A stretch of DNA of 64,000 bases from contig CM121343.1 of assembly GCA_051530055.1 (NCBI GenBank), positions 2,450,389-2,514,388 on the forward strand, given 5' to 3'. The notes under the pieces are model-generated. The model was given only the letters and a program-made list of their open reading frames with translations. It was not told where the DNA came from and ran no database searches. A program made the translations under genes and the position numbers. This DNA is from Neoechinorhynchus agilis. Taxonomy: Eukaryota > Animalia > Acanthocephala. The stretch's first letter is position 1; the number at the start of each line of letters is the position of its first letter. Positions 8,540 through 64,000 of the stretch are shown here, piece by piece.

Positions 8540-9070
8540 TCTACCCCAACGACTGATTCTAGCTATGAATGAACTTAAGGCATCATGAAGTTGGACAGGG
8601 GCAAAGTATTCTGCATAATAGATGAAGACCACTGCCATAGGATGGCTGCGGATATCCTATCAGGTCCAAAGTTCCGATCTAATGATGAATGCCCCCTATG
8701 AAGCGAGAATAGATGTTCAATCAATTCTTACTAACGCTGAAGAAACGAGGAAGTATTGATCATGAAATATATTAAAGACATTGATCCAGAAAAGGGAAGA
8801 CACCGAATATGTACTTATCGGACAAAATACATAAGTCGCCATTAAAAGCACGACCAGTTATTGCCTCACGTTCTGGATACCACACCAAAACATTGGCTAA
8901 CATGTTGCGAAATTTAATGCCGGCGGATAAGCACATCGTATCATCGGGTCCAGAGTTCCTGGAATGACTGAAGGCGCACGGCAATAAAGAATATAGAATG
9001 GTTTCTGCTGATGCCAAGTCTCTATTCGCAAAAGTGCCATTGGACTCAGCGATCAACCTTGCGGGAAACG
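8540..9070 (+). mobile_element. Penelope-like RT N-terminal fragment
   Basis: KLDRGKVFCIIDE (ADKG-like motif), ARPVIAS, MVSADAKSLFAKVPLD. Confidence 0.75.
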
Positions 9071-30603: not shown

Positions 30604-30625
30604 AAATTCTCTTAACATTTGAAAA

Positions 30626-32389
30626 AAATTATCAATCTCTCTTCAAAGCTACGAATCCAAAAAACATGAAAAAGATTTAATAATGTAACGAAAATGTAAT
30701 TCAGACCTTTAAGAAAGTACGAGGAGATAATGGTAATTTATGCGTTAGAGATCAGCCAATCAATCAGCTGTGAAAAAATTGCGTGTCGGATATTTTATTA
30801 CCGATCGATTAATAATATAAAACTTTTGATAATACTAAAACACTGCTCACAAATGCACTTTTTGTACCGAGTGAAAAAAATTAAATTTCGCAAAATGATC
30901 CGGTCCAAAAAAACTGAAGCAATCCGAGAAAACGCCGATGAATGCGACAATCCTCCACTTTGAAACGGATTATCCTTATTTTTTACCAATTGCCCTCTGA
31001 GATGCAATCGCATCCTTCGTCGTCATCGGGCTTTGGCCTTTCGCCAATACTCACTGTTTGCAAGTTTTTTCAACTGCGAATGGGGATTAACCCTCAACGA
31101 CACTCTTGTTTTGTCCTTGTTCTTTTATACCAGAACGAAACTTCCTGGGTAAGTACGTAACGGAAATACGTTTATGATTGTCTAAAACAATTTTTAAGTT
31201 TTATTTTTCAACCTTTTCGGCTTTCCTGGACTTCAAAATCATTCATCGCACTGATGAAAGCATTTAGAATTTCTCGACGAAATCGATTGGTCATTTACAA
31301 ATCGAAGTAGAAATGAGAAAACACCGCTTAGTAGAGACTTCGCTCCGTCCTTAAACTCAATGATTTAACTAATTCATCTTTCAGACTTCTTCAGAGTGGA
31401 AAACCAAGATATTGAGATGTTTCTTTGAAGGATCTTCATTGGAGGAAGTTTGAGTAAAGATTTCAACTATACAGCATTTTCGTCTCGCTTTAGCCTATTA
31501 ATCAATCTTCATTCAAACGAAAAAAATTTAAATTCAAAGTTGGCTTGGTTTGCCGGCATTTAACGTAGTTTATTTTAGAAGTATTTAGGAAATTAATCCT
31601 CAGAGCCCTGAACATAGAAGAAATCCGGTGGGCCGTCGGATGCATTGTGCGCCCAAGTACCTCATCGTTGGCAAATTATTAGGCTGAAATCAATTAATGA
31701 GGATTTCATTTGGGGAAATGTTGCCCAGTGGGATTTCTGCACACAACAAAGTTTTTCGGCCACGCCCAAGTGAGATGAACAGTCGAATTGGGCCTTTGAA
31801 GATATTCAATGGGTAATGCGCCAATTTCCTCATAACTTTTTCTGAAATAATCCGCATTGAGTTCAAGAAATGGATAAAACACCAAAAATGTTACCCTCTT
31901 CTACTGATCAATGCATTTTATTTTCAAATCTCTAAACATTCAGACGAAAAAGTCTTTTTTCTGAACATCGAAAAAGGTGAGACCATTTTGTGAGACTAAC
32001 TCTTTATTCTGTGTTGAAATGAGGCCTTTTCCAGGGCCGATAATTTGGATTGGACACACAGATCACCGATGTGGTCCAAGGAAGTACATAATTCCATTTA
32101 ATATCTTGGACCATACGGTTTTGAGTATTTAACATTCCTTCGGAATCTCAGATATGTCCAAGAGGCGGGACCATCGGTGGGTTTCCTTCCTTCAGCGGTA
32201 TTTCGTCCCCTTTGGTTCTACGTCATCGGTGCTCCGAAACAGAGATTCGGAGTTCAATTCCATTAGACCGTATGGGCACAATTATGGAATGTACAAACTC
32301 TGCCAGTTTTAATTTTGGACCGATTATTGAATAAATTTATGCTTATTTCTGACTTGCCGATTAAATTTATTCTGTGTTGAAGTAAGGCC
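30626..32389 (+). repeat. Segmental duplication arm A (~1.77 kb), inverted relative to arm B at 56382-58163
   Basis: The reverse complement matches along its length, e.g. the near-identical ORFs at 30730(+) and 57818-58057(-). Confidence 0.95.
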
Positions 32390-32469: not shown

Positions 32470-33050
32470 TACCGGGGCCTCGTACGTAATAACTCCTCAT
32501 CAGCAACAAGCGATGGAGCGTATACAGAAGTTATCCTATCATCTACGTGGATTGGTTGTGGATTGTACTTCGAGACTAGTGAGATCTTGATAGCTAATCC
32601 CACACCATGAAGTTTTGGCTCCGTTGCAACCTTTTTCCTATTCCGAAAGTTGTCCTTCATTGGCCGCCGACAGCCACCACATCAATACCATTCCTTCGGA
32701 GCTCCTTTGGAATCAATGCCGTGTGCCGTTCAGATCGATCACATTTGTCTCTGTCGATTCATGTTCTGATGTTTCAAACAAGAGTCCATAAACTTTGAGA
32801 AAAACTTGTTCTTTTCTTTTACGGCCGCAGAGGGATATCACCAAGCTTTTTTAGCCCACATTTTCTAGGGCCTTCTCCAACTTGCAGAGAGCACTGCGAC
32901 GGCTTAAAAAAAATTTGCTCCACATATCCGTAACCACCGAAGTTTTGGCGCCAAGTCATCAAAACAGCGATCATCTCGTGTATATCGCTGATGTCAAGCT
33001 CCGGACTAAAGGCTTCCAGGGATTTGGCACCCCGTGCCTTCGTTATCATT
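32470..33050 (-). mobile_element. RTE-clade LINE fragments (APE and RT), scrambled
   Basis: HGVGLAIKISL...VDDRITSVYAP is typical of RTE APE; degenerate KARGA...GDIPL RT start. Confidence 0.65.
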
Positions 33051-33179
33051 CTCTTATCTCCACTAGACTGAAGAAATGAAGTGAAGTAAAAGAAGACGAT
33101 GGAATAGGATCGATGAAGTCTTTGGCGTGATGAGATTCAAGTGAAATTCTGGCGTCACACCGTCTTCCACTTGTTTTGC

Positions 33180-33690
33180 TAGTAAGTTTTCTACCAAGTG
33201 TTCCGCCACAGATTGACGCAAAGGCCGTTCAGTTTTGCCTATGTAAATGGACTAGCGATTGTCATCGGCCAAATATCATTCGCATGTCATTTGGTAGACC
33301 ACGTTGCTTCGAGTGCAAATCAAATCTTGTCGGCTATTTGCGTCCCCGGACTTCCATTGTGCGTACACATCAAAGACGATGCTGGATATGTTTCCGGTGT
33401 TTCATGATGTCCAGGTCGCGTCAGGATTCGCCCAAGTGTAGTTGCCGTTCTGTGGACAATCCGAATATCCATTCCCGATCCATTCAACCGTTTCTCGAGT
33501 GCACTTATCGTTCTCTCATTGTCGACGTTTGTAGAGAGCGAAACAAAATCAAAAGGCATTACCTGGCTACCATTTAAGTCATTGCATCGCGCATTCAGAG
33601 AATTAAGTGAACCCTCAACATTCTGCAAAAATGAACCTGTCCTGTGAAGCAATGGGCAAATTTTCGTCGCCAAGAAGGGAGATAATCGGT
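33180..33690 (-). mobile_element. Penelope-like fragment with a large internal deletion
   Basis: FDFVSLSTNV (RT) is joined directly to IRIVHRTATTLGRIL (linker before GIY-YIG). Confidence 0.7.
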
Positions 33691-34278
33691 ACGCAGATCC
33701 ATGGACTGCCGAAAAACTCGGTCTGCATTTAAGAAAAACGCTGTTGTCAATGTTACTGGACTAACCGGCATCTTGTATTCATTTTGACCGTTGGGTACAT
33801 TCCGAACACTCGCAACGGTTCCTTCTTTTCAAATATCTTGCGGCTATCACTTTACGAAACATGCTTTTCAACTTTTTGCGCTTCAATTCTCAATCATCCT
33901 TCGATTCCATCATATATATAAGCCGATCTCGCAGTATTTTCTGCATTTTGATCTCTTATCCACCTTTGTCAATCGAAATTAAATCACCGCCATTATCACT
34001 CAATGAACGTAATATTGTGATGTTTTATAAAGCTTGTTATAGTGAAGAGAGATTTGCGGAGTACAAGAAAATGCCGTCAAAAGCTGCTATGCACCATCTT
34101 TAATGATGAAATTTGTACTACGGGCGATCCCAAAGGAAAAGATAAGCGACTCTAAGGTTAAAAATCACTATTCTATAGGCTTCATGATTGTTTCTACAAT
34201 TCTATTGCTTAACGAAAAATTTAAAAGGGGCAGCTAAAAATGAACTATGTAATATCGCGATTAATAAAACGGGATATT

Positions 34279-34518
34279 TATAATTTTAATGAACATACTC
34301 CCGGTCATAACCTATTCGATTTTGATTTATTGGAAATATTTCGAAGGAGGTAATCCCGCCTCATCAGTCATTGTTTGCAAGCTTTTTTCAGAAAAAAACA
34401 AAAAAAACGAAAATACTTGCAAACAATGACTGATGAGGCGAGGTTACCTCCTTCGAAATATTTCGATTAAATCAAAATCAAATAGATTATGACCGGGAGT
34501 ATGTTCATTAAAATTATA
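34279..34518. repeat. Fold-back inverted repeat (103-bp arms, 34-nt loop); each arm carries a degenerate hammerhead
   Basis: 34279-34381 is complementary to 34416-34518. The right arm reads CTGATGAG-GCGAGGTTACCTCCTTC-GAAATATT. Confidence 0.92.
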
Positions 34519-34682
34519 CTTTGACTTACCCGAAGGATTTTCTATCAATGAAAACGGGATATAGCGGATCAAAGATTTTAAAATCATTTTTTCTATAAAA
34601 AATATGTTCATTTTTGTGTTCTTTTTTTAAAGCAAAAGTTTTTTTAAGCAAGCATACATAATTTATAGTTTCTTCAACGCTC

Positions 34683-35490
34683 CTATTCATCGGCGCTGGC
34701 CAAAATGCTAGCCGCATTACCCCGTTGCACCGCAATGCTTATCTTTTGCGTCAAGAACAACGTCGATCTTGGCTCTCCAGTCGCCGCGTAGATTCGTTTC
34801 TCCAAGTCCTTCAGGAGGGCTACTGCCGACCCTCCCAAGGCCCCATACGTTTCCACACCGAAGGGGACGAAATGGTAATTTCTTGTTAGCTCCCTGTATT
34901 TTGAGCATTTCCGATCCTCTGCAGCCGTCGCCGCTCCTCCTGGACCTATTTTCGAGTGGCTGATGTTGGAGTTTGCCAACGTGTCCACATACGTTGCATC
35001 CCACAACAAACATTTTCCCTCCCGCCAAGGAAATACGGTATCTAATCCACAAAGATTAGTGGGTTCTAGAATGTTTGGAAGGGAAAGCGTTTTTAGAGTC
35101 CTACTCAGAATGGCATTGATTTCAGCATGCCTTGGAAATCGTCCCGATGACGTCTTGCATATGAGATCGTGTTTCCCCGAAGAGTCCACTGTAGTGCCGC
35201 AGCGGCAGCGATGCGGGATGCAAATCGGTAGACCTAATCTCAAGGATACTGCGATCTTGACGACTGAGTCAGCAAGGAGATTTCCAAGTTTACCTACAGG
35301 GAGAGCATTCAGCCACGCTCCCGACTCCTTCGTGGAACAGGCTACCAGCCGGACCTGAGACACCTCATCCAGAAGATCTTTGAAAGAGTTGTGAATCTTC
35401 TGAACAAGAGGAATGTCCCAAGACGACTGTTTGCACTCATTTGCGGGGAGCTGGTTGATGCCTGTCAATTGATGCCATTGAGATAACCCC
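34683..35490 (-). mobile_element. CRE-like retrotransposon C-terminus (CCHC zinc finger and restriction-like endonuclease)
   Basis: SGAWLNALP, CRCGTTVDSSGKHDLIC, RHAEINAI, PWREGKCLLWDATYVDT, FVPFGVETYG, AVQRGNAAS. Confidence 0.92.
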
Positions 35491-36537
35491 GTGGCAAAGA
35501 TCAAATCCTTCACTGATGTGCCTGTGATGAGAAGAATAGATATTGATTTATTGTTCTCAATTTTTCGTGCGTTTCGTCGGACCACAGGCCTAAAACGTAG
35601 AGGTAGGTCATATCCTGAGTTTGTCTGTAATCAAACGCGTTTCTTTCGTTTATACAAGTTTTCAACTGCATAAAATCGACTGCGCACTTTGATTCGTAGT
35701 TTCGAAACCGTTGTCGATTTGCTCTTTTCTGGGTGTTTTCACAAGAGTTCGAGCATTTCGGCTTATTAACCTAAGCATGTAAATTTATAAATGGATATTT
35801 GGCTTTTAATTGTACTTTCAATAATTCGATGTAATCGAACAGATCTTTATTCTCCTGGTCCCGACTTTCACGGGCATGAAATAACATTTCATTTCCACTT
35901 CATGAGTTACAAATCCCACTGTGAACTTCTTTTCCAGCATAGAACACCGTCGCTTTTCCATTGCGTACAATTCGGATATAAAGTCCCCTCCTATCTTATC
36001 CGGGATACTTCGAGGTAGCCTCCTCCTTTCATAGCACCAAGAAACTCGAATTGATCAGACTCCGGACCACTCGTTGATTGTTGTTATTAGAAATCGATAT
36101 TTTTATTAGACCATTTTAAGGAATTACGATCACATTCGGTTGCAAGAGGGCGATTGAAAATGAAAATCAGGTTCAGTGATTCTTACCGAGATTTATTGAC
36201 TTCTTTCGAGAAATATATCTCATTGTATTTGACATGAATTGTAGGTCTATCGTGCTTTGATATCAGTGTTTCAGCCTCGTTATTGCCCACTATCACCTAT
36301 TCGTTGTGTCCTCCGTGCAATCTACTTTAGCCGTAATCGTAATCTTTTTCAGTTTACTTCGAGCATAACCACAAGTCACAAATCTCTGATTAAAAAGCTC
36401 TTTAAAACCAAAATGTCGATAAGTGAGCAGACTGGGTAAAGACATAAATTACATTTCTTTAATAATCGATAAAAAAATCCTTCGGATTAGTCAAAGTGTT
36501 ATTTTGGTGATAATAGTCCCGGTACTAGCACATTTGA

Positions 36538-36587
36538 TTTTTAGAAATATTTCGCGAGGTGGCCTCGCCTCATCAGTCATCTAAAAA
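36538..36587 (-). ncRNA. Minimal type I hammerhead ribozyme (PLE 3' region)
   Basis: Minus strand reads TTTTTAGATGA-CTGATGA-G-GCGAGG(CCA)CCTCGC-GAAA-TAT-T-TCTAAAAA. Confidence 0.8.
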
Positions 36588-36686
36588 ATAATATGTTTTT
36601 CTTATTCAGGTTTTGAGCTCGAGTGCGCGGGATCGCCAAACCCGAAGTTCGGGGACCAATTATCCGCTCGAACCCCCTGCGATATA

Positions 36687-37100
36687 CTACGTTTTTTCCA
36701 TGATTTTGGTATTGATTTTTAACACGTCGCTGGTTGGAAGTTTCAAGCTAAAATTAGCTTTATTTCCTTCCATTGTGTTAGACACAGCGATGTGTAAGGC
36801 CTCCAAAACAAGACGTCTTTTTAGGTTTTTCTCTATTTCAATGAAGTTGGTGCCACCAAAATCTGCTCGATGCTTGCATGTCTCTTGATGATTCGAAATT
36901 GCGGACGAATGCTCAAATCGACCGCAACCTTTCTTACATTGAGCGACCCTCTTCTTGGTGCCTTGCATCGTTTGTCCGATATATACTTTCTCACACTGTT
37001 CACAATGAATTCTGTATATCCCATGAGTCGGCTCAATTCTACCCTTTCTCTTGAATGTGCTTCTGAGCGCGATTCCTTTAGTATTGTATAGACGAATTCC
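36687..37100 (-). mobile_element. Penelope-like GIY-YIG endonuclease fragment (related to 22120-22515)
   Basis: HGIYRIHCEQCEKVYIGQTMQG...SSAISNH...RRLVLEALHI...MEGNK. Confidence 0.92.
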
Positions 37101-39386
37101 ATCCTTCTTACTCATAATGAAGTAAATCATTTGATTCGTGTTATCATCAATGAAGTGCACTCTTTCGGAGCATACAGGCTCTGCAGGCGATTTTTTGTTG
37201 TTATGCGGATGGTAGTTACACTCTCGGATTCCCCGGTCCATAATACCAGCATTAATATTCTCGTAGACGTTATTCCTTAATACGTATTTTACAGCTGATA
37301 TCTCAAATCTGTGGAAATCACTGCGTTCATCTTTAAAATCCTTTAAAAGTAACCGCTCAATCGATCAAAGGTTAAAATAATATTCGAACGGTGATGTTGT
37401 CTTTGTTCAAAGTATAATCGTCCCCTGCAACCAGAGTCAATTGTCGATTTTGGTGTAATTAATCGCTATTTGTATTTCTTGAGTAAGATTCTCTTTAACA
37501 CAGCAAATCATCGGTAGTGGTGATACTTTGACCTCATTCCTCTAAAATCTTCTCTCAGTTGGAATCTGAAATAATCTCAAGAGTTGACAAGCAAAAGTTG
37601 TATCGTATCGCAATTTTGGAAATGTTTATTTCCTTTGGCCGCATTTTTTGTGATGGAAGTGTTCTTTGTGAATCCATAAATAATTTATTTCTAATATAGG
37701 AAGTAAAAAATCTATATTTCGAATGCATCCGTTTAATCCCAAGATTAACTCTGATGCTCGACAAGGAAATTTGTACATTGGGACTACTTCAACCGCTTGC
37801 TTTATAATAAAAAATATATTTGTTCCACTAACAAAGTGTTGTTATAGGGTTGAATTAATCAAATCTCTGAGTCTTACGAAATATTGATACGCTTTTGATA
37901 AAAAGGGTTCAAATGTCCAAATAAAAATATGCGGCGAATTTTACAAGTGAAAACTTAAATTCTGCATTTTCTCCAATATAAAAATTCGAGTTTGTGAGCA
38001 TTGATATTTTTCTGAATTTAGGGCCGTACATGAACATCTTTTTAAAAGACGAAGTATTTCCGTATTAAAGTTTTCCGCCATCATCCGCTTACTGAAATTG
38101 GTTTGAAATACATTATTTAAAGAGAAAAGATTATGTTCATAGTTTTGATCTATTACTTTTCTTATAAAAAACATTCTAAACGCTGAGTCCATTCCATTTA
38201 AATTAAAAATGTTATTAATCATTGTTCGTATGACCCATCCGAATTCATGTTGTACTTCGAGCACCGCCTAAATTATCGTCGTATTCACAGTTACGTTTTG
38301 CAAAGAATTCCTGATATTTTCTTTTGTTTGCAGCAGAAATTGAGTAGTGAGTTATCTAGAGATCATCTTACAAAATTTAGCCAAATCGTCTTCCTTTCCA
38401 ACAATTGTAAACGGAAGCGAAATTTTTCGAATTGAAAAATCGATCGAATTTTGTGTAGTCATCGTCCTCTTGAAATGCCTTTAGTTCCAAAGTATTCAAG
38501 ATCTTTTAAAAAATTCAGGGATCGAAATGAAATTCAATCATTCGCTCCTATAGAAAGTCACAACGTTTGTGATTGTCAACTATCACACAGAAGCAAACAA
38601 TACTAATCACATCGACTAATTCAATTAGAATAACTTCGAATTTTCTTTAACAAAGTTTCTCATGAACATAAACTGCATATTTTAAATCGTGTTTCTCTTG
38701 GTTCGGTTTACTACTCGTCGATAATCCGAATGCACACAGAAAACTTTTCGAACATTTAATAATCCGTCGTAATCTTCAATCGAAGTATAAATTGTCGATA
38801 CAACTAATTGGAGCATTTGCATCAGTCCATCAGTGTCAAGTTCATGGATCTAAATCTGATGTCGAAGCTCCGACATGATTTATCAAGTACTGTTTTCTAA
38901 CAAATTTTCTTATAAAATGCTCTCCATATTCAAGACTTTAGAACTCCACGCGCTACTGAATTCTCAAAAGACCAAAATCCACTTTCATCCGAAATTGTTT
39001 CAGTGTATCCTTCGACAAGGATGAATTTCCGTTATGCATTGTCCATAATCAATTCATTGTAACTTGCCATACTCAAATGTCAACAACAAGGAATGTTTCC
39101 TAATTTTTAGAGTGATTGAAGGCAGCTCCATAACAAACATCCTCAAAGTCATCTCGCGATACGATCATTGTCCGTTTTTATATCTATCTCAAGTCGACAA
39201 TTTTATTATATAAGAAGAATTTTGAAAATGCTAATAGAAAACATTAGGGATCACTGATGAAAAGATTTATACACAACAATCTTAAAAGTGGCTGCTACTA
39301 ATTAAAATATCGCTAAATTTTTATAAAAACAATCCATATTGATCCATTTTAAAGGAAACACGGATTAAAATTTCCTAAGATATTCT

Positions 39387-52008: not shown

Positions 52009-55000
52009 ATGAGTTCGTTTGTCGGTAACGTCAGTGGGGGTGGTGGATTGGATGACAATGAGGAGTTCTCTGAACCCAGAAAGGCGATGGCAGCTCTTGA
52101 ACTCCTAGAGGAGCACTACCAGAGTTTAATAGGTCCTGATAACGATGATCTTCGGTCTGCTATCGATCGTTTGACGTCAGTTTTTAAACGGCGGTTGTTT
52201 AAGGCCCTTCTTGACATTCGGATTTATTGTGAGACGATATTGCAGGATCCTGGATGTGATCGGAGCAGTAAGACTGCAAGAGCGCACGAGTTAGCTGATA
52301 AATGGGAGCGGTTATGTCCAATGCAAGCTACAGCTCATAGCACCGTACCGGTTTCTTCTATGAAGTCAGCGGAATGTCTAGTTAGAAATCAGAACACTGA
52401 TCTTTACAGTGGACTCGAGGAATGCGAGTTTATAGGCGATGATCCCAGTACGGTCTCAGCTAAGGACTATGCGGATCATTGGATGATCGAAGATGTAATT
52501 CTAAACCGAGAAGCAATGCAAAGATCAATATCTTCTTCTTCTACCTTGAGTTCTTCAGGGCTTGGGTTTAGCATAGCAGGTGGAGTCGATGCTCCTTGTA
52601 TACCAACGGATAATTCCATATTTATAACGCGCATCACACCGCAAGGCTTGGCTCACCACGATGGACGCCTTAGAATGCACGATATTATTTTGAGGGTAAA
52701 CAATGTGAGTTTTATCAATATAACCCACTCGAATGCGGTTGAGACACTGAAAAGATCGGGAGGTGCCGTGAGTTTGCAAGTTAAGCGTCTTGCGCCTCCA
52801 AATGTGGAACAAATCACTTTGAGTAAAGATGCGTGCCGCCAAGTAATGGCCTTCGAGCACATCCATCGCCACTATCATCACGTCGAATCTCTTAGCATGG
52901 AAATGATGGGTTTCTGGATTCATGGTGGCATAAACAGCGAAGTATTTCCTGGTGATCATGGAGTTTTCGTCCAAAAAATTAAAAAAAAGAGCAGTGTAGA
53001 TATGGACGGAAGGTTGAAGCTCGGAGATAGGCTGCTAATGGTCCAAACCGACAAAAACGACTACGACCTCACCTTTGTTGATTTTAATCAAGCTGTTGAA
53101 TTCGTCAATCAGGCTTTGAACGAGATCAGTGACACTGTGACTCTGGTGGTGGGACATATTACGAACGCTAAACGAATTGCTCATGACGATACCAGTGGAG
53201 GTGGGAAATTTATTTCTTCTGTTAGCCATGGTGTGCGAGCTGCGCCTGTGCCGCCTGGAGGTGTAAGACGAATTCAACTAGAGAGAAGTCGTGGCGGTGG
53301 GTTCGGTTTCAATATTGTCGGCGGAGATGGCGGTGAGGGGATATTTGTGAGCTTGGTTCTACCTGGTGGAGCTGCTGATCTTAATGGTAAACTGCGCCGT
53401 GGTGACCAAATCCTGTCTGTTAACAATATCGACCTACGATTCGCTACACACGAGGATGCAGCTCTCACGCTCCGTAATGCCGGTCCCAGTGCGCTAATTA
53501 CGGTAAAGTATTGCCCCAATCAACTTTACTCGTTTGACGATAGAACCAGTGTTTGCGATGAAGATGATTTCATCAGATCGAATGACCAGTGGCAAAGGCA
53601 CAATGGTAGTTTGACCGGTGGATTGATGGGTCATCACAAAGCACCCGCGCCCTCTTCTCATCATTCGACGCTGGTCGGAACCAATAGGCGTCGCCGTCAG
53701 TTCTACATTCGCACTCATTTTGACTATGATGCTTTCAAAGACAGTGGCTTGCCTGGCCGCGGCCTTAATTTTCGAAGAGGAAATATCCTCCATGTCACTA
53801 ACGCTGCTGATGATGATTGGTGGCAAGCCCGGCATGTCGATGCGCTAACCGGAGTCGAGGACGATCATGTGGGGATAATTCCCAGTAGAAAAAGGGTTGA
53901 GCGAAAAGAACGAGCTAGCCTTAAAAAGGTAAATTTTTCCAAGTCCACTGGGGGGAAAAAAGTATGGAAAGGAAAATGTCTTCTTCGATGGGACGAGTTG
54001 GACTAAGACATTTGCCTTTTCAAAGGACCAATAAATCTTCGCAGTATGTCACCCAGTGGAATAGGCGCTTTGGAACGAAGGAAAAAGAAAAGGTTTGGAA
54101 TCTTCGGAAAGGATAAAAAAGAGATCCATTCTGGCGATGAAAGTGAATCTAACGACGCTCAAGATGGATGCTCCAGTAACACCACACTTACAGTACCCGA
54201 TGAACATCCAGTCATTTACGAGTACGTGAGTCGTGTTGATCTACAGTATACACGCCCAGTGGTGGTCCAAGGTTCGATGAAGGAAGAGATCAATGAGTAT
54301 TTGATTCAAGAGATGCCTGATTTGTTCGAAGTTTGTGTTCCGCACACGTCGAGGCCGAAAAACGATAATGAGGTGGACGGTAAGGATTACATTTTTGTTA
54401 GCCAAGAGGAAATGGAATGCTTTGCTAAAAACAATCAATTTATTGAATGTGGCGCCTATGATGGAAATATGTATGGCACAAGCATCGAATCCATTAAGGC
54501 CGTCGCTAACGAGGTACAATACCTAAATTGTATGCACAAATGTCCACTTTATCGCTATTTCAATCCATTTGGCGTTTCAGCTGCGTTCAAATGTATCCCG
54601 TATACTTGACGCACAAGTAGATAATTTAACATCGGCACTTTTTGGTTGCAAATCCGAATCCATTCGTTTTGTTCTAATCATCACTTCATCATTTGACCAT
54701 TATTTTTACATTCACTTTGAATGTTATTTGCAAATACACGGCTGCCAAGCCAAAATACATAAAAAAATTGAGTGATAGGTTTTCGGATTTGAAATTCGCC
54801 ATTTCGTCGACAACTAAATGCGATATGCATTTCTCTTTATTTTATCTCAGATTGAATATTTGATTGAAACGCTTTCGTCAAAATTCATTTTGTTAGAAGT
54901 GGACATTGTAGGCGACAATTCTAATATCTATAACGGAATCAATTTTCCTCGACGACTTATAATTTGAAGGGAAAGCACTGCGTACTGGACGTCAGTGCGG

Positions 55001-55398
55001 TCGCAATCGTAAGGTTGCAGGAATCGAACCTGCATCCAATCGCCGTGCTAATCCGGGCCAAATCTCCTATGAACATACAGTTAGTAGCGAAGCAATGGTT
55101 TAGTGGGCGTATTTGAAATTGTTCATCTTTTAGAGCTTGGAGTGCTGGAGCGAAAGCAAAAGTGTCAATGGAAAGATGTCAGCTTCTGTTTGAGCAAAAC
55201 CTCAAATTAGAACGCGAATTTGGTTCATATTTCACAGGTTTGGCTATTGCTTGTGACTGTTATCTGTATCGTTTTTAAGACATTGCCGAGGCTGACACAT
55301 TTAATGAACTTCTTGACAGAGTGAAAGCAATTATTGTACAAAATTCAGGACGTAAAATATGGCTACCCGTACCAAATCCTGTTGACGAATGGTTTTAA
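52009..55398 (+). CDS. dlg1: Discs large MAGUK (L27-PDZ1-PDZ2-PDZ3-SH3-HOOK-GK), 5-exon model, about 929 aa
   Basis: L27 (ALELLEEH...LFKALLDI), GLGFSIAGG, GFGFNIVGG, SH3 (YIRTHFDYD...DDDWWQAR), GK (CVPHTSRP...YGTSIES; GKHCVLDVS; IWLP). Introns at 53997-54044 (best guess), 54514-54969, 55080-55133 and 55238-55279; stop TAA at 55396. Confidence 0.95.
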
Positions 55399-55759: not shown

Positions 55760-56560
55760 ATTCATTGCAGGGCAACCTCCTCGACACCAAAGGCTTTCCT
55801 CAAGGTGCCTTCCTGACACCACTTCTTTCTAATATTTTCTTAGACAAACTTAAACCTCACTCACGTCTCACCCTAAAAATTTTTATGTCGACGATCTCAC
55901 TCTCACTTCTTAATCACCCACCCATTTCTCCCTCTCCTTAACATCTTACGATATCATCCACATCAAAGATTTCTGCACCAATCACAAAATCTATCTGAAC
56001 TTCTCAAAATGCTTCGAAATGATCCCCACAATCTCCCGTAACCCCAAATCCTACTCCGATCTTTCAAAAAGATCCAACAATACGCCTCGCAGAATTCTGG
56101 GTCTCCAATTTCAATCAAATCTTAAATAGGACCTCCCATGCGGTTATCCCGCCTTTTACAACCTGTCCAAGTCACAAATCCGTCGCCCTGAAACGTTTCA
56201 TAGAAGCCCTCTGTCACCTAATAACTTTATGAGATTTTCAACAAACAATCAAAACACTCAAAACTACCACCGCAATTTTTACCACATTTTATTCCCACTT
56301 TCACGAGAGCACAACATTCGCAATCACAATTCCTTTCATCATTTTACAGTGCGCCCAATTAAAATTATCGGCCGTAGAAAAGGCCTCACTTCAACACAGA
56401 ATAAATTTAATCGGCAAGTCAGAAATAAGCATAAATTTATCCAATAATCGGTCCAAAATTAAAACTGGCAGAGTTTGTACATTCCATAATTGTGCCCATA
56501 CGGTCTAATGGAATTGAACTCCGAATCTCTGTTTCGGAGCACCGATGACGTAGAACCAAA
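55760..56560 (+). mobile_element. Decayed LINE RT (C-terminal half)
   Basis: GFPQGAFLTPLL, FYVDDLTL and thumb-like remnants. Confidence 0.7.
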
Positions 56561-58163
56561 GGGGACGAAATACCGCTGAAGGAAGGAAACCCACCGATGG
56601 TCCCGCCTCTTGGACATATCTGAGATTCCGAAGGAATGTTAAATACTCAAAACCGTATGGTCCAAGATATTAAATGGAATTATGTACTTCCTTGGACCAC
56701 ATCGGTGATCTGTGTGTCCAATCCAAATTATCGGCCCTGGAAAAGGCCTCATTTCAACACAGAATTAAGAGTTACAGTCTCACAAAATGGTCTCACCTTT
56801 TTCGATGTTCAGAAAAAAGACCTTTTCGTCTGAATGTTTAGAGATTTGAAAATAAAATGCATTGATCAGTAGAGGAGGGTAACATTTTTGGTGTTTTATC
56901 CATTTCTTGAACTCAATTTGGATTATTTCAGAAAAAGTTATGAGGAAATTGGCGCATTACCCATTGAATATCTTCAAAGGCCCAATTCGACTGTTCATCT
57001 CACTTGGACGTGGCCGAAAAACTTTGTTGTGTGCAGAAATCCCACTGGGCAACATTTCCCCAAATGAAATCCTCATTAATTGATTTCAGCCTAATAATTT
57101 GCCAACGATGAGGTACTTGGGCGCACAATGCATCCGACGGCCCACCGGATTTCTTCTATGTTCAGGGCTCTGAGGATTAATTTCCTAAATACTTCTAAAA
57201 TAAACTACGTTAAATGCCGGCAAACCAAGCCAACTTTGAATTTAAATTTTTTTCGTTTGAATGAAGATTGATTAATAGGCTAAAGCGAGACGAAAATGCT
57301 GTATAGTTGAAATCTTTACTCAAACTTCCTCCAATGAAGGTCCTTCAAAGAAGCATCTCAATATCTTGGTTTTTTACTCTGAAGAAGTCTGAAAGATGAA
57401 TTAGTTAAATCTTTGAGTTTAAGGACGGAGCGTAGTCTTTACTAAGCGGTGTTTTCTCATTTCTACTTCGATTTGTAAATAAGCAATCGATTTCGTCGAA
57501 AAATTCTAAATGCTTTCATCAGTGCGATGAATGATTTTGAAGTCCAGGAAAGCCGAAAAGGTTGAAAAATAAAACCTAAAAATTGTTTTGGACACGAATA
57601 AACATATTTCCGTTACGTACTTACCTAGGAGGTTTCGTTCTCGTATAAAAGAACAAGGACAAAACAAGAGTGTCTTCCAAGGTTAATACGCACTCACAGG
57701 CGAAAAAACTTGAAAACAGTGAGTATTGGCGAAAGGCCAAAGCCCGATGACGACGAAGAATGCGATTGCATCTCAGAGGGCAATTAATAAAAAATAAAGA
57801 TAATCCGTTTGATGGTTTTAAAGTGGACGAGGGTTGTCGCATTCATCGGCGTTGTTTTCTCGGATTGCTTTAGTTTTTTTGGACCGGATCATTTTGCGAA
57901 ATTTAATTTTTTTCACTCGGTACAAAAAGTGCATTTGTGAGCAGTGTTTTAGTATTATCAAAAGTTTTATATTATTAATCGATCGGTAATTAAAAATCAG
58001 ACACGCGATTTTTTCCCAGCTGATTGATTGGCTGATCTCTAACGCATAAATTACCATTATCTCCTCGTACTTTCTTAAAGGTCTGAATTACATTTTCGTT
58101 ACATTATTAAATCTTTTTCATGTTTTTTTTGGATTCGTAGCTCTCAAGAGAGATTGATAATTG
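56382..58163 (-). repeat. Segmental duplication arm B (inverted copy of 30626-32389)
   Basis: Reverse-complement match with scattered substitutions and small indels. Confidence 0.95.
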
Positions 58164-58299
58164 ATTTCTTCATAAAATCATTAGCTTTTCTCGTATTATT
58201 TTGAATGTTTCTGGAGCTGAAATATTTTATTTGGCGGAGAAGGAAGGATGAAATGATTTCGAATTAAAATTTATTTAACAAAATGGGGTTTTGGTGTAT

Positions 58300-60721
58300 A
58301 TGAACTTTTGAAAGTTAAATGCGATGGATCGCTGATATGAGCATCTCGTTACTAAAAAGCGATTTAGATAGAGAGAAATCCTCCGTCGATCGGATGGATC
58401 CATTAATGGGGACTTTGTTGACGCCGCTGCTACGCGATATGCACAATATCTTCGGTGTGGTCGTAGTGTTGAAGTGCGGGAAGTTTCCAGGGCGCGAAAG
58501 TTTGGTTTTAAAATCAAGTTGAGGAAAAGTCCTAGACAATCTCTCTGTGCAAGTGCTGGGCAATCCTTCATTGTGGGAAAAGGTAGTGACGGAATGTTGA
58601 AATGGGGATTCAAGACTCCGTTTTAATTCGGGTCTTGCACCGCATTATTCCGCAGCGGCTTCGTAGAATGCTTTCTGGACAAAGGACAAACGGCGTTTGA
58701 CCAATCGGCCTGTTTGGGTAATATTCTCACTCTTCGTAGTGTAATAAGAGAAAAGCGGGCAGACAAGCAACCTCCCGCAGTAGCTGTGCTTGATATCAAG
58801 AGTGCTTTTGACACTGTTTCGCACAATGCTGTAGAGGAAACACTTCGTAGAAATTGATTCCCTGCGTATCTGCAAAGATACGTGATAAGCAAATACCATG
58901 GAAGTACTGCAAGGATCCGTTTGTCTAACGCCAAACCTTCAGAACCCATTAATTTCCTGAGAGGAGTAAAGCAAAGGGACCCCTCTCTCCTTTGCTGTTC
59001 GCGCTGTGTGTAAACGATCCACTGCATGAGATCCGGAAACTTGATACGGGGTTCCAGCTAAAGAAAGACACTCGCTTGTCCGGACCTCCAAACAATGATA
59101 GACACTCTTCACACTAAGCTCAAAGAATGCAAGCTTTTCTTGAGCCCTAATAAGTGTCAAACATACCATCATAGTTATAAAAGCTCTAAGCTCATGGTGG
59201 ACCGCGAATCTAAAATAAGGGTAAACGGCATAAGGCTAAAGGCCACCGTGGACGGGGACCCAGTAATATCCCTCGGGGCACTCCATGGAAGGAAACTACA
59301 GTGTAGGAAGGTTTTGATATTCTGGCGTCGCTTTTTGCTGCTACGGAGCGTGCCCAACTTACGCCAACTCAGGCCGCTCACTTGCTAAATGACTATGGGA
59401 TGCCATCCCTCATTGCCAAGCTTAAAGCATCCTGGGACGTATCGTCTACTTACTTGAGGCGTATCGACGATCAATTGAGATCAAAACTAAAGAAACTCCT
59501 TCAACTGTGGAGGAGTGTTAGCGATGGCGCCTTTTATCTGCCGCTCTCAAAAGGTGGGTTGGGATTTAGGTCCCTTCGCCATCAAGTACAAAGTACGAGG
59601 CTTCGAGCCGTGAGAGCAGTTCTTGATAAATTCGGAGACGTGATTGATCTCCGCAAGGAGATCGGCACAATTCGGGAGTATTTCGACATGTTTGGTGACA
59701 AGTGCGAACTGGATCAAATCTCTTCAAATACCTCATTTCAACAGCAATATTTGAAAAAGTGGATGGAGGAGACGACGCAATCGCATGGAATCGACTGCTT
59801 TACGAACGGAATGGTTGATCGAAGTCTCATAACTTTTCGCTATCGACAAGAGCGTCATCGTTCTTATATAGAGCACGTAAAGCTAAGATTCCAAATCTTG
59901 GAAGCAGGCTCCGTTTGAGCCGAATGGATGACCAGCGTGGTGGAGCATGTTTTTGCATTGTACCGCACCAGTTGAATCCTGTGCTCATGTACTAGACGGA
60001 TGCGATTACACTTCTACTGCAATGATCCGATGCCAAGATAAGGTGCGATCGCGTGTTGTGTGGACGTTGGCGAAGAGACCTGGAGCCAGATTTCATTGTA
60101 AGGTGCAAAACCGTTTTCATGAAGAAAGCAGCAATTTGCTTAAACCTGACCTCATATTGAGTGATAGGAATTCACGAAGGGTGTTCATTGCGGATATTGC
60201 AATTTACTATGAGACAGGTCGAGATCGTGCAGAAGTCGTAATGAAGGATAAAGAGGATAAGTACGCGTCCATTGTACCAGTAGTTACAAGAGAACTAAAC
60301 GTGCAGGAGAATGAATTCTCGACTATCAGTCCAGCAGTGGGATTCCGGGGAGACATTTAGCAACTCTATACTCCCCCGCCTGAAGCTCCTCTCCATTGGA
60401 CAGCGAACTGCACGGAATGTTGCAAATACCGCAGCCGAGCAGTCCTTGTTGGTATTCGCTGTTTTTTCGGGCAGACGGTGGTGCCAGAGGCAACAACGCT
60501 GAAATCGTGGAAACTACATGGGTCGTAGCTCCTGCAGGAATAGCAACAATGAAGAATTCTCAAAAAAGGGGGCAACAGCAAACGAATAAAAACCCAAACA
60601 ATAAAGGGCACTTCGAAATGGTGTACAACGGTATAAAAATAGAAAAGACTCAACTCTAAAAGACTGATCTTTTAATAACAACATTGTAAAGTGTTTGATA
60701 ACTGGGTAATAAATGCATGCC
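58300..60721 (+). mobile_element. R2 non-LTR retrotransposon, 5'-truncated and degenerate
   Basis: RT (VLDIKSAFDTVSH, RGVKQ(R)DP, FYLPLSKGGLGF), a CCHC finger (CTAPVESCAHVLDGC) and RLE (KPDLILSD...IADIAIYYE...KEDKY). The 3' end abuts TAGCCAAATG, the canonical R2 target junction in 28S rRNA. Confidence 0.9.
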
Positions 60722-60824
60722 TAGCCAAATGGATCGTCATCTAAATAGTGACGTTCATGAATGGATTATTGAGTTTCCTACTGTATCTGCCTGCAGCCCA
60801 GCGAAACCCTAGCCAAGGGAACGG
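60722..60824 (+). rRNA. 28S: 28S rRNA fragment (~103 nt, immediately 3' of the R2 site); not a full rRNA gene
   Basis: TAGCCAAATG..TCGTCATCTAA.TAGTGACG..CATGAATGGATTA..GAG.TTCC.ACTGT...AGCGAAACC..AGCCAAGGGAACGG is about 80% identical (hand count) to the recalled eukaryotic consensus. Confidence 0.92.
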
Positions 60825-61592
60825 ACGGCAATTCCTAAATACGAAACGAAATGCAAAATATTTAAAGTTTACTTGTCGAAATCATGATCATCATCGATTT
60901 CGCTATTATAGAAAAACAAGTCACTTAAAATGGTTTTTTTGGTATGCAGAAAAAATATCATTGATCAAAACCAAAATGAGCCTAATAGAAGAAAGACAAA
61001 ATTGCAAAACAGCGCTCGAAGTAGTTTTGTAATATCGAATAAAAAAATATCGTGCTCAGAGTTTTTGTATTTGACTCAAAAAGTTCACCTCTCGCTAAAA
61101 TCATTGACAGAAGCAAACATTAAAAGATCAAAATGCTACATCGCTATATATTCATGACCTAGACTTAATTTTTCAGAGATCCAACCTTTTTAAAAGGCTT
61201 TGACCTCTAATTCTTGGTAGAAACACAAAACGGATATATTCCATTTCTAAAGATCAGCGAACGTAACCTGACGACCGTAAACATAAAATTAGTTCGAATG
61301 AATTTTGGTATTGAGTTTCAAACTAAAAAGATCGAAGAAATATTGAACTATCCTAGGCCTTCGATAATCGCTTTAAGTTTAAGCTTGAAACAATCAAGTT
61401 CTCTTCTTCCCAATGCGCAAGATTAATAAGATTAAAATCTGTCCAATCAGAATTCAAGAAAAAAATTTGCATCACTATGGAAACTTTTCATCCTTAAACG
61501 TTTCACTTCTGTAATATTGCGGCTTTAATACTAGTAAAATGAAAAGTTAGTATAAAATTTATATTTTTTTCTTAACATCTTTTCGTTTAGTG

Positions 61593-62147
61593 ATGAGAGA
61601 ATGCTTTTGTTTTAAGCAGAGCAGTGATGCAAAACTAAGTGAAATTAGCAATGGTGGGAGCACTAAGGAGACCAAAAAATTAAAAGGATCTCGTGGAATA
61701 TTGCGAGCATTAGTAAAATGCTTTTGCGGGGCTACGGAGTTAAAAGAGAAAGTTGATATCAGCAACAACTATAAAGATAGTGATTTGAAACTATCCTCCC
61801 ATCATGAAAACAAGAAAACGTGGCAAGACTATCGCGAAGGCTGGAAAAAAATCGCAGATGAAGTCATCAATCAGGACAACAATAAAATTATGATTATTGG
61901 GGGTTTGAAGCAAAAAGAAGAAGTCAATCCAACATCAAACATCGAAAATAAATGTACGGCTACATCCAAAGTTAATAAAAAATTGAAAAACCCAAATTCT
62001 GGAAAAATGAGAAAATCTTAGACTTCAACAACACAAGAAGATGGTTCAGATGGTGACCGTTGCATTTTGTACATAATGTGGACGGCAATATTTATTATGC
62101 TGCTGTGTGCAATTGTTGTTGGGAGCACATTTTTTAAATGTTATTAA
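61593..62147 (+). CDS. Orphan tail-anchored membrane protein, 2-exon model
   Basis: The in-frame TAG at 62019-62021 is also the acceptor of a 51-nt intron (61971-62021). The frame then continues to a C-terminal hydrophobic helix ILYIMWTAIFIMLLCAIVVGSTFF and TAA at 62145. Confidence 0.55.
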
Positions 62148-63691: not shown

Positions 63692-64000
63692 AACTTTGAA
63701 TTTAAATTTTTTGCTTTCATTTGAATGGAGATTGATTAATAGGATAAAGCGCAACGAAAATGCTGTATAATTCAAATCTTTACTCAAACTTCCTCCAATG
63801 AAGATCCTTCAAAGAAGCATTTCAATATTTTGGTTTTTTACTCTGAAGAAGTCTGAAAGATGAATTAGTTAAATCTTTGAGTTTAAGGACGGAGCGTAGT
63901 CTTTACTAAGCGGTGTTTTCTCATTTCTACTTCGATTTGTAAATGAGCAATCGATTTCGTCGAAAAATTCTAAATGCTTTCATCAGTGCGATGAATGATT
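63692..64000 (-). repeat. Third partial copy of the 1.77-kb duplication (same orientation as arm B; runs off the window)
   Basis: Matches about 57232-57540. Confidence 0.93.

What the first reader, a model, noticed from the sequence alone, without database searches (positions are those of the whole stretch)
58300..60824. R2 retrotransposon outside rDNA still carrying ~100 nt of its 28S target
The element ends exactly at TAGCCAAATG, the canonical R2 insertion junction. It is followed by 103 nt of 28S and then ordinary AT-rich DNA, with no 28S on the 5' side. R2 is normally confined to the rDNA array. This looks like ectopic integration of a read-through R2-28S RNA (3' transduction of its own target) or relocation of an rDNA fragment. 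It recreates part of an R2 site among protein-coding genes about 3 kb from dlg.
Basis: partly seen in the sequence, partly recalled or inferred. Interest (0 to 1): 0.7.

Follow-up and report, generated by a model that had tools for sequence, protein, structure and literature searches.

The report
Dead R2 copy with 28S tail
A broken, long-dead fragment of the ribosomal-gene parasite R2 lies outside the ribosomal genes of a thorny-headed worm and still carries about 100 bases of the ribosomal gene it came from; stray copies like this are already known, so it is a useful molecular fossil, not a new kind of element.

Summary
Window ~58372-60721 (+) is a 5'-truncated, inactivated R2-type non-LTR retrotransposon. 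It has RT, linker, a CCHC knuckle and a restriction-like endonuclease, at least 5 frameshifts, several stops, and the catalytic YADD box deleted. It ends exactly at TAGCCAAATG, the canonical R2 junction. Then come 103 nt of 28S (60722-60824) and unrelated AT-rich DNA. No upstream 28S, 18S or 5.8S occurs anywhere in the 64 kb.

The host is the acanthocephalan Neoechinorhynchus agilis, not an insect. The tail is 88% identical to this worm's own 28S and shares its lineage-specific bases, so it is an old, endogenous, decaying relic. It is not a chimera with live rDNA. dlg ends about 3 kb upstream, and the surroundings are rich in transposon debris.

Two other loci of the same assembly hold R2 fragments with exact junctions and 28S tails of 17, 33 and at least 237 nt, so the pattern recurs.

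The mechanism is unresolved. I favour off-target retrotransposition of an R2 RNA that kept downstream 28S (~0.5) over DNA-level relocation of an rDNA fragment (~0.33). Non-rDNA R2 copies, and R1 copies with short 28S tails, are already published. This is a new member of a known kind, of modest interest.

The parts
58372..58616 (+). Remnant of the R2 ORF upstream of the RT core (end of the N-terminal region and RT motif 0 area). The 5' truncation point lies at about 58350-58372.
   Evidence: tblastn with the N-terminal ORF of the same-genome R2 copy L009(-): aa 393-459 match 58372-58569, 54% identity, E 4e-14. GC content rises from about 0.30 to 0.39-0.52 at 58300-58400.
58617..59280 (+). Decayed reverse-transcriptase domain. 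It has frame changes near 58674, 58980, 59070 and 59259 and in-frame stops at 58855 and 59304. The catalytic YADD box is deleted between 59066 and 59080.
   Evidence: Pfam RVT_1 at E 5e-5. R2 profile positions 337-561 match collinearly, but positions 485-505 (AFADD) are missing. P0137 aa 1-22 (..HLVYADDVLLLADNY) has no counterpart, and the alignment resumes at PDLQ = 59080.
59259..59918 (+). Thumb/linker region of the R2 protein, the best preserved stretch (an open frame of about 200 codons ending in a stop at 59916-59918).
   Evidence: PDB R2Tg 9dou and 9nl3, E 3e-6. 54-64% aa identity to N. agilis proteins P0136 and P0138 and to P0137. Profile positions 593-719.
59932..60502 (+). CCHC zinc knuckle and restriction-like endonuclease (..CTAPVESCAHVLDGC.., KPDLIL, IADIAI) plus the C-terminal end. 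There is a premature stop at 60358 and a shift to another frame, and the ORF probably ends at about 60502.
   Evidence: PDB R2 9nl3 and 9dou, E 1e-7. Profile positions 801-927. The C-terminal piece aligns at the expected profile positions 924-951 but is not significant alone.
60503..60721 (+). R2 3' untranslated region, A-rich, ending ..AATAAATGCATGCC immediately before the 28S junction.
   Evidence: All five N. agilis R2 3' ends examined share AATAAAT(G/T) 8-15 nt before TAGCC. The last 14 nt are identical to copy L008e. The closest copy, L008a, is 65.6% identical over about 700 nt.
60722..60824 (+). 28S rRNA gene fragment beginning at the first base downstream of the canonical R2 insertion site. 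It may extend to 60828.
   Evidence: cmscan LSU_rRNA_eukarya positions 2280-2388. blastn E 1e-21 against snake and bird 28S. 91/103 identical to host 28S with host-specific bases shared. It does not continue: neither cmscan nor local alignment finds further collinear 28S.
61099..61147 (-). Possible second 28S-derived fragment in inverted orientation. It corresponds to 28S about 580-635 nt downstream of the R2 site. Support is marginal.
   Evidence: 36/49 identity. Local score is 21, against a best score of 17 in 162 other window segments and a maximum of 16 in 200 shuffles. E is 0.001 within a 7-kb neighbourhood. cmscan does not report it, and the score falls to 19 against host 28S.
56382..58168 (.). 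Young interspersed repeat copy flanking the relic. It is not part of the relic and ends 170-200 nt before the R2 5' limit.
   Evidence: 96% identical to 30621-32389 on the opposite strand. A partial third copy lies at 63692-64000.
52009..55383 (+). Discs-large (dlg) gene, the neighbouring host gene.
   Evidence: Pfam L27_1, three PDZ, SH3 and Guanylate_kin. tblastn of DLG homologues reaches about 55368-55383. The best foreign homologue is Pomphorhynchus laevis at 42%.

Best explanation
What it is (near certain, about 0.95). It is a dead, 5'-truncated copy of an endogenous R2 retrotransposon of Neoechinorhynchus agilis. It was copied from an R2-occupied 28S gene and now sits in transposon-rich intergenic DNA about 3 kb downstream of dlg. 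It keeps the natural R2/28S 3' junction and 103 nt of 28S. Since arrival both parts have decayed neutrally: the tail differs from the host 28S at about 12% of sites, and the ORF has frameshifts, stops and a lost YADD box. It has no function and is not a usable R2 target.

How it got there (inferred, about 0.5).
1. R2 has no promoter of its own and is co-transcribed with 28S.
2. Its 5' ribozyme removes the upstream 28S, but nothing defines the 3' end.
3. An R2 RNA that still carried about 103 nt of downstream 28S was reverse-transcribed from its 3' end at an off-target nick. This was target-primed reverse transcription by R2 protein, or by another LINE enzyme in trans.
4. Synthesis stopped early, which gave the 5' truncation.

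This amounts to 3' transduction of the element's own target.
For: Identity and origin:
- R2 domain order and R2 as the best hits.
- Homologues P0001 and P0008 sit inside complete 28S genes at the same TAGCCAAATGCC junction.
- Same-genome R2 copies are 54-64% identical in protein.
- The junction is exact.
- The tail carries host-specific 28S bases.

Death and age:
- Frameshifts, stops and the YADD deletion.
- 12/103 substitutions in a normally invariant rRNA segment.

For the RNA route:
- Only the downstream side of 28S is present. Nothing from upstream 28S, 18S, 5.8S or the spacer occurs in the 64 kb.
- The same holds for the 18-kb R2 cluster L008: six or more R2 fragments, and the only rDNA is +1..+17 and +1..+33. 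This matches a ribozyme-trimmed 5' end and an undefined 3' end.
- The 5' truncation is typical of abortive reverse transcription.
- It is a single isolated copy in a gene-bearing region that has collected many other retroelement insertions.
- Tail lengths differ between copies (17, 33, 103, at least 237 nt).
- There is a published precedent. Non-28S R1 insertions carry up to 14 nt of downstream 28S, and the authors infer that the template RNA often retains flanking 28S (PMC2718515).
Against: - No target-site duplication, terminal poly(A) or microhomology is recognisable at either end. The 5' limit is known only to about 25 nt, and 12% decay would blur short duplications.
- In the same genome, at least one short tail (L008a, 17 nt) ends at an inverted-duplication breakpoint. 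The L009(-) tail runs into another R2 fragment. DNA rearrangement therefore demonstrably produces R2 plus a truncated tail.
- If the inverted 28S-like piece at 61099-61147 is real, a simple 103-nt read-through does not explain it.
- Canonical R2 protein is highly site-specific, so off-target priming must be rare.
Confidence: 0.5

Rival explanations
1. DNA-level relocation. A double-stranded piece of an R2-occupied rDNA unit, broken inside R2 and about 103 nt (or more) into 28S, was moved to this site. The route could be capture at a double-strand break, ectopic recombination, or segmental duplication from an rDNA-edge or R2 'graveyard' region. It then decayed.
For: Rearranged R2/28S structures exist in this genome. 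L009 has head-to-head R2 copies at the edge of an rDNA unit, and a 28S tail that runs into another R2 fragment. L008 has inverted and segmental duplications at 90-99% identity, one of which cuts a tail to 17 nt. There is a possible inverted 28S fragment 270 nt beyond the tail. No retrotransposition hallmarks are visible.
Against: Random DNA fragments of rDNA units should sometimes include upstream 28S, 18S or spacer. None is seen in the window or in L008. The copy is isolated, far from any other R2 or rDNA sequence within 64 kb. It shares no flanking sequence with the L008 or L009 copies. The inverted fragment is marginal and cmscan does not see it.
Confidence: 0.33
2. Site-specific R2 insertion into a pre-existing stray 28S fragment (as in Bombyx non-rDNA R1/R2), followed by loss of the upstream 28S half.
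For: Sequence-specific R1Bm/R2Bm insertion outside 28S genes is reported (Xiong 1988, cited in PMC10257491; details are from my own recollection). It would explain the exact junction without invoking off-target priming.
Against: No upstream 28S remains. At about 88% preservation, 40-80 nt would be detectable. This route needs an extra deletion beyond the usual few bases. R2 target recognition also needs upstream DNA.
Confidence: 0.07
3. The 28S-like stretch is part of the element itself: a 3' UTR that captured 28S sequence, as in some fish R2 lineages, in a family that no longer targets rDNA.
For: [quoted passage not shown] The tail is only 88% identical to the host 28S.
Against: Other N. agilis copies carry tails of 17, 33 and at least 237 nt. 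The 237-nt tail is 98.7% identical to 28S, so the tail is flank rather than a fixed element terminus. The divergence is matched by the decay of the ORF. The published cases involve a different part of 28S.
Confidence: 0.04
4. Assembly chimera or relic of a lost rDNA array. Either a mis-join with rDNA-derived sequence, or the last trace of a former nucleolus organiser at this site.
For: The assembly is a MaSuRCA hybrid of Illumina and ONT reads with Hi-C scaffolding (PMC12690905). rDNA and R2 are repeats that are prone to mis-joins.
Against: There are no Ns in the window. The locus is internal to a 7.8-Mb scaffold. Both R2 and the tail are decayed, so they are not collapsed reads from live rDNA. 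No other rDNA debris occurs in 64 kb.
Confidence: 0.06

Closest known systems
Non-rDNA R2 copies in Drosophila (Stage & Eickbush 2009, PMC2718515)
   Same: They are R2 copies not inserted in a 28S gene, frequently incomplete, diverged from the rDNA-resident copies, and regarded as dead ends.
   Different: Those copies are only 1-2% diverged, and no 28S tail is described for them. This one is much older (about 12% in the tail), lies in an acanthocephalan, and retains 103 nt of target.
Non-28S R1 insertions carrying downstream 28S (same paper)
   Same: A site-specific rDNA element sits outside rDNA with an intact 3' junction plus co-inserted downstream 28S. The authors interpret this as a template RNA whose 3' end extends into 28S.
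   Different: R1 belongs to a different clade and uses an APE endonuclease. Its tails reach only 14 nt, whereas this one is 103 nt, with 17 to at least 237 nt in other copies.
LINE-1 3' transduction
   Same: Read-through past the element's own 3' end carries the flanking genomic sequence to a new locus, usually with 5' truncation (own knowledge of the L1 literature).
   Different: L1 events end in poly(A) and have target-site duplications. Neither is visible here. In this case the transduced flank is the element's own specific target.
R1Bm/R2Bm outside the 28S genes of Bombyx mori (Xiong et al. 1988)
   Same: A few R2 copies outside the rDNA are associated with 28S-like target sequence (cited in PMC10257491).
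   Different: That case is interpreted as sequence-specific insertion into stray target-like sites. Here no upstream half of the target exists. The paper itself could not be read.
R2 lineages with 28S-derived 3' UTR, and R2NS families (Kojima et al. 2016, PMC5035012)
   Same: In both, 28S-like sequence is physically attached to the 3' part of R2, and R2 relatives are found away from 28S.
   Different: There the 28S-like segment is an internal, lineage-wide part of the element, and R2NS families are active and multi-copy (>98% to consensus). Here tail length varies between copies and the copy is a decayed singleton.
Degenerate R2 in Bacillus rossius ('dead element replicating', Martoni et al. 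2015)
   Same: A non-functional R2 persists in a genome (reference seen).
   Different: That element stays inside the rDNA and spreads by rDNA turnover. This copy is outside the rDNA.

Membership tests
R2 (site-specific RLE-type non-LTR retrotransposon) | Single ORF with a central reverse transcriptase of R2 type | tested here: met
   RVT_1 match. Collinear match to an R2 profile at positions 337-719. 54-64% identity to same-genome R2 ORFs. In this copy the catalytic YADD box is deleted, so the domain is present but dead.
R2 (site-specific RLE-type non-LTR retrotransposon) | C-terminal CCHC zinc knuckle followed by a PD-(D/E)xK restriction-like endonuclease | tested here: met
   Window 59947-60360 matches R2 structures 9nl3 and 9dou over C..C..H..C and KPDLI...D.. 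(E 1e-7). Profile positions 801-927.
R2 (site-specific RLE-type non-LTR retrotransposon) | 3' junction at the canonical 28S site (..TAAGG | TAGCCAAATGCC..) | tested here: met
   The junction is exact at 60721|60722. It is the same junction as in bird and snake R2 inside 28S and in four other N. agilis copies.
R2 (site-specific RLE-type non-LTR retrotransposon) | N-terminal zinc-finger/Myb DNA-binding domain and 5' HDV-like ribozyme | tested here: inconclusive
   Both are absent from this copy because it is truncated at about aa 390. No ribozyme family was hit. The same-genome copy L009(-) has an N-terminal ORF with four CCHH/CCHC motifs, but it has no PDB match by sequence.
R2 (site-specific RLE-type non-LTR retrotransposon) | RT phylogeny inside the R2 clade and not in NeSL, R4, CRE or HERO | tested here: inconclusive
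   All PDB hits are R2. Database homologues include verified 28S-resident R2s and one 18S-inserting R2-clade element. No outgroup sequences were available, so no formal tree was built.
R2 (site-specific RLE-type non-LTR retrotransposon) | Residence inside a 28S gene of the rDNA array | tested here: not met
   Only 103 nt of 28S follow, and no other rDNA occurs in 64 kb. This is the anomaly itself. The copy is a displaced relic of an R2, not a resident one.
Retrotransposed copy with 3' transduction (TPRT product) | Target-site duplication or defined target deletion, and a 3' terminal A-rich or untemplated tract | tested here: inconclusive
   No convincing direct repeat brackets the insert. The best is a 13-nt T-rich pair 200 nt and 100 nt outside the ends. 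The 30 nt after the tail look only moderately A-rich by eye, and I ran no enrichment test on them. The 5' end is known only to about 25 nt, and 12% decay limits detection.
Retrotransposed copy with 3' transduction (TPRT product) | 5' truncation with an intact 3' end that includes the flank of the source locus | tested here: met
   Truncated at about aa 390 of the ORF. The 3' UTR, the junction and the 28S flank are all present.
Relic rDNA array / rDNA orphon | Other parts of the rDNA unit (18S, 5.8S, 28S 5' part, spacer) nearby at comparable decay | tested here: not met
   cmscan at E<=0.5 over the whole window finds only the tail. blastn with host rDNA (28S 3' part, spacer, 18S) finds only 60722-60824.
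R2 with 28S-derived 3' UTR / non-specific R2 (R2NS) | The 28S-like segment is a constant part of the element, shared by copies of the family | tested here: not met
   Tails of 17, 33, 103 and at least 237 nt in five copies, the last 98.7% identical to 28S. Only five copies could be examined.

The most novel reading that the evidence does not exclude
In this acanthocephalan, R2 has repeatedly retrotransposed off-target from RNAs that still carried variable lengths (17 to more than 237 nt) of downstream 28S. The stray copies would then be natural snapshots of the in vivo R2 template's 3' end. They would show that R2 can 3'-transduce its own target and scatter half-sites around a compact 46-Mb genome. 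They would also be the first record of a canonical-site R2 lineage in Acanthocephala/Syndermata, where only the derived R9 had been noted.
Probability: 0.4. Interest if true: 0.5.

Novelty: new member of a known kind. Interest (0 to 1): 0.3.

Why it matters
R2 is the model for site-specific target-primed reverse transcription and is now being engineered for transgene insertion. How often it lands off-target, and what the 3' end of its natural template looks like, are therefore practical questions. This relic and its siblings in the same genome are fossil junctions. They prove that a canonical-site R2 lived in the rDNA of the acanthocephalan lineage. If they arose through RNA, they also record template 3' ends extending 17 to more than 237 nt into 28S.

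For annotating this genome the message is simpler. It is a dead transposon fragment with a small rRNA pseudogene piece. It should be masked, and it should not be read as a gene, an rRNA gene or an assembly error.

Tried and rejected
- Rfam at gathering thresholds found nothing in the window. The tail is too short and too decayed, and only E-value mode showed it.
- The first protein search, with the whole pseudo-protein, was swamped by generic RTs and gave only 22-29% hits. Searching the C-terminal half alone found the same-genome relatives.
- An exact-protein look-up of a neighbouring 796-aa ORF failed. The dlg ORF worked and identified the record.
- My by-eye extension of the R2 ORF in another frame upstream of 58617 was wrong or insignificant. 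The correct frame was shown by the L009 N-terminal ORF.
- Contigs of homologues P0002 and P0003 had no rRNA flank, so they were uninformative about site specificity.
- The search for target-site duplications and inverted repeats gave only short AT-rich pairs of the kind chance would give.
- Possible further collinear inverted 28S pieces at 61471-61489 and 61672-61690 were rejected (E 3.4, wrong spacing).
- ORFs flanking the relic have no Pfam match, so there is no sign that the tail is followed by another rDNA-specific element.
- Xiong 1988, Luan & Eickbush 1996 and the Eickbush 2015 review are not held in the library.
- The N. agilis genome paper does not discuss transposons or rDNA.
Full report
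**1. What is in the sequence**

Reading 57800-61400 and translating the three forward frames shows a GC-richer block (0.39-0.55, against about 0.25-0.35 outside). It carries recognisable R2-type protein motifs spread over different frames. It is followed by ..AATAAATGCATGCC|TAGCCAAATGGATCGTCATCTAAATAGTGACG...

The 28S assignment of the part after the bar is solid:
- Rfam in E-value mode aligns 60722-60828 to eukaryotic LSU positions 2280-2388, starting exactly at UAGCCAAAUG.
- Against real 28S genes that contain an R2 (snake L006, bird L005), the match is 60722-60824, 80.6-81.6% identity, E about 1e-21.
- Nothing from the 28S upstream of the R2 site, and no 18S or 5.8S, is present anywhere in the 64 kb.
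- The 28S similarity stops at about +103 to +107.

**2. The element is an R2, and it is dead**

The evidence for R2 identity:
- The two best-preserved pieces hit only R2 proteins among solved structures (R2Tg 9dou, 9nl3, 9nl2).
- A profile built from 11 database homologues matches collinearly at profile positions 337-927 of 975 over 58617-60357.
- Two of those homologues were checked and sit inside complete 28S genes at the same TAGCCAAATGCC junction. One other sits in an 18S gene.

The evidence that it is dead:
- The path through the frames needs at least five frame changes and crosses several stops.
- Profile positions 485-505, which contain the AFADD/YADD catalytic box, are missing between 59066 and 59080. 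The closer relative P0137 confirms this: its ..HLVYADDVLLLADNY has no counterpart in the window.

The ends of the element:
- The ORF probably ends near 60502, and the 3' UTR is 60503-60721.
- At the 5' side, homology to the N-terminal ORF of a same-genome R2 copy begins at 58372, which corresponds to aa 393 of that ORF (54% identity, E 4e-14).
- The copy therefore lacks roughly the first 390 codons and the 5' UTR.

**3. Whose genome, and whose 28S**

- The dlg ORF identified the record as GCA_051530055.1, CM121343.1, a 7.8-Mb chromosome scaffold. The window lies at about 2.45-2.51 Mb.
- R2-like proteins on two other records of the same assembly are named Neoechinorhynchus agilis. The WGS prefix JBMGUZ is the N. 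agilis genome of PMC12690905.
- The host is therefore an acanthocephalan, not an insect.
- One of those records (L009, an unplaced 58-kb scaffold) carries real rDNA. Against this host 28S the tail is 91/103 identical, and it shares the host-specific bases that differ from the eukaryotic consensus.
- The tail was therefore copied from this lineage's own rDNA and has since acquired about 12 substitutions in a segment that is otherwise nearly invariant.
- This rules out a collapse or chimera with live rDNA. It dates the relic as old, but I cannot convert the divergence into years.

**4. Surroundings**

- dlg (L27, three PDZ, SH3, GuK) spans 52009-55383.
- A young 1.8-kb interspersed repeat lies between dlg and the relic (56382-58168). 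It is 96% identical to 30621-32389, with a third partial copy at 63692-64000.
- The window as a whole is full of transposon ORFs: pogo/Tc5 DDE, RVT, integrases and RNase H.
- The public annotation calls no gene over the relic.
- The flanks immediately next to the relic are unique within the window, so no empty site can be reconstructed.
- No target-site duplication or clean poly(A) is visible.

**5. The same pattern elsewhere in the genome**

L009 holds two R2 copies:
- An R2 fragment on the + strand abuts the 28S 3' part of an rDNA unit (8901-10080), which is followed by spacer and 18S.
- Head-to-head with it is a longer R2 on the - strand. Its 28S tail is intact for 237 nt (98.7%) and then runs, with deletions, into another R2 fragment.

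L008 lies on chromosome CM121342.1 at 205-223 kb:
- It holds six or more R2 fragments in both orientations, related by inverted and segmental duplications of 90-99% identity.
- The only rDNA in these 18 kb is two tails, of 17 nt and 33 nt, each starting exactly at TAGCC.

All five 3' ends share AATAAAT(G/T) 8-15 nt before the junction. Otherwise the UTRs are hardly alignable. The window copy is closest to L008a (65.6%). Stray R2 copies with exact junctions and tails of variable length are thus a recurrent feature of this 46-Mb genome.

**6. Mechanism**

Shown:
- The insert is a copy of an R2-occupied 28S gene.
- The copy reaches from inside R2 to +103 of 28S.

Inferred:
- I favour an RNA route. 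R2 is co-transcribed with 28S, and its 5' ribozyme removes the upstream 28S, while its 3' end is not defined (established knowledge; see PMC2718515 and PMC3774820).
- This explains why only downstream 28S accompanies the stray copies, here and in L008. It also explains the 5' truncation and the variable tails.
- The same inference was drawn for non-28S R1 insertions with up to 14 nt of downstream 28S.

Against the RNA route:
- There are no TPRT hallmarks.
- L008 and L009 show that DNA rearrangement also makes truncated tails. The 17-nt tail ends at an inverted-duplication breakpoint.
- A marginal inverted 28S-like piece at 61099-61147 would fit a rearranged DNA fragment better. It is the best-scoring of 163 window segments after the tail itself, but cmscan does not see it.

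I put the RNA route at about 0.5 and DNA relocation at about 0.33. The remainder is split among three options:
- insertion into a pre-existing stray 28S piece;
- a 28S-like 3' UTR, which the variable tails make unlikely;
- an assembly artefact or relic array.

**7. Comparison with what is known, and novelty**

Already published:
- Non-rDNA R2 copies, incomplete and diverged, in five Drosophila species.
- R1 copies outside 28S with co-inserted downstream 28S.
- Bombyx R1/R2 outside 28S genes.
- Non-specific R2 families, and R2 lineages with 28S-derived 3' UTRs.

What is new here is the host phylum:
- Kojima et al. list only R9 for Rotifera.
- The main text of a 2026 survey of R2 across animals contains neither 'rotifer' nor 'acanthocephala'.
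- The N. agilis genome paper does not treat transposons or rDNA.

The length of the retained tail is also new. I rate it a new member of a known kind, of modest interest (0.3). The claim that it 'recreates part of an R2 site' has no visible consequence. Only the downstream half is present, it is mutated, and nothing has inserted there.

**8. Limits**

- No reads were available, so the junctions are not independently confirmed.
- Only three loci of the genome could be reached, through protein look-ups.
- No outgroup RTs were available for a tree.
- Several primary papers were not held in the library.

Noticed in passing
window 61099-61147 (- strand): A 49-nt stretch resembles the conserved 28S core about 580-635 nt downstream of the R2 site, in inverted orientation (36/49). 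It is the best-scoring segment in the window after the tail itself, but cmscan does not report it.
   Followed up: partly
window 56382-58168, 30621-32389 (opposite strand), 63692-64000: A young interspersed repeat of at least 1.8 kb with no long ORF. Copies are 93-96% identical. One copy ends 170-200 nt upstream of the R2 relic. The family was not identified.
   Followed up: partly
window 34333-34464 (both strands): A palindromic hairpin matches the miRNA precursor families MIR5380, MIR7504 and mir-651 on both strands, below their gathering scores. It is probably a MITE-like inverted repeat and not a miRNA gene.
   Followed up: no
window 34683-35585 (- strand): A 300-aa ORF carries a Cys/His motif followed by RH..E..D motifs that look like a restriction-like endonuclease C-terminal domain of another non-LTR clade. 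It has no Pfam hit and no hit with R2 homologues.
   Followed up: partly
window 1-24000 and 33000-37500: Dense transposon debris: pogo/Tc5-type DDE transposase (698-1609), RVT_1 (3283-4143), integrase cores (16734-18150) and RT RNase H (20614-20994). A short RT-like motif (GFPQGAFLTPLLSNIFLD) at 55765-55941 lies between dlg and the relic.
   Followed up: partly
L008 (CM121342.1:204997-222905): A cluster of six or more R2 fragments in both orientations, with inverted and segmental duplications at 90-99% identity. The only rDNA is two short 28S tails (17 and 33 nt). It looks like an R2 'graveyard' about 0.2 Mb from a chromosome end.
   Followed up: partly
L009 (JBMGUZ010000014.1:37345-53989): This appears to be the edge of an rDNA array. 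Two R2 copies lie head-to-head, one abutting the 28S 3' part of an rDNA unit. The (-) copy has a 491-aa N-terminal ORF with four CCHH/CCHC motifs. Oddly, directly after the 18S (which ends at 16118), the LSU model aligns from position 675 (16082-16645). This suggests that ITS, 5.8S and the 28S 5' end are missing in this unit or misassembled.
   Followed up: no
L003 (JGI metagenome 3300007512, contig Ga0105016_1014378): An R2-clade element (P0004, 985 aa) is inserted in an 18S rRNA gene (SSU model around position 1100). An uninterrupted R2 site lies in the downstream 28S. This is an R8-like change of target in an unidentified marine eukaryote.
   Followed up: no
window 60707-60721, L006 7122-7136, L008 and L009 R2 3' ends: The last about 15 nt of the R2 3' UTR contain a shared AATAAAT(G/T) motif in all five N. 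agilis copies and in the snake R2. It may be a conserved 3'-terminal element recognised by the R2 protein, or simply an A/T-rich coincidence.
   Followed up: partly
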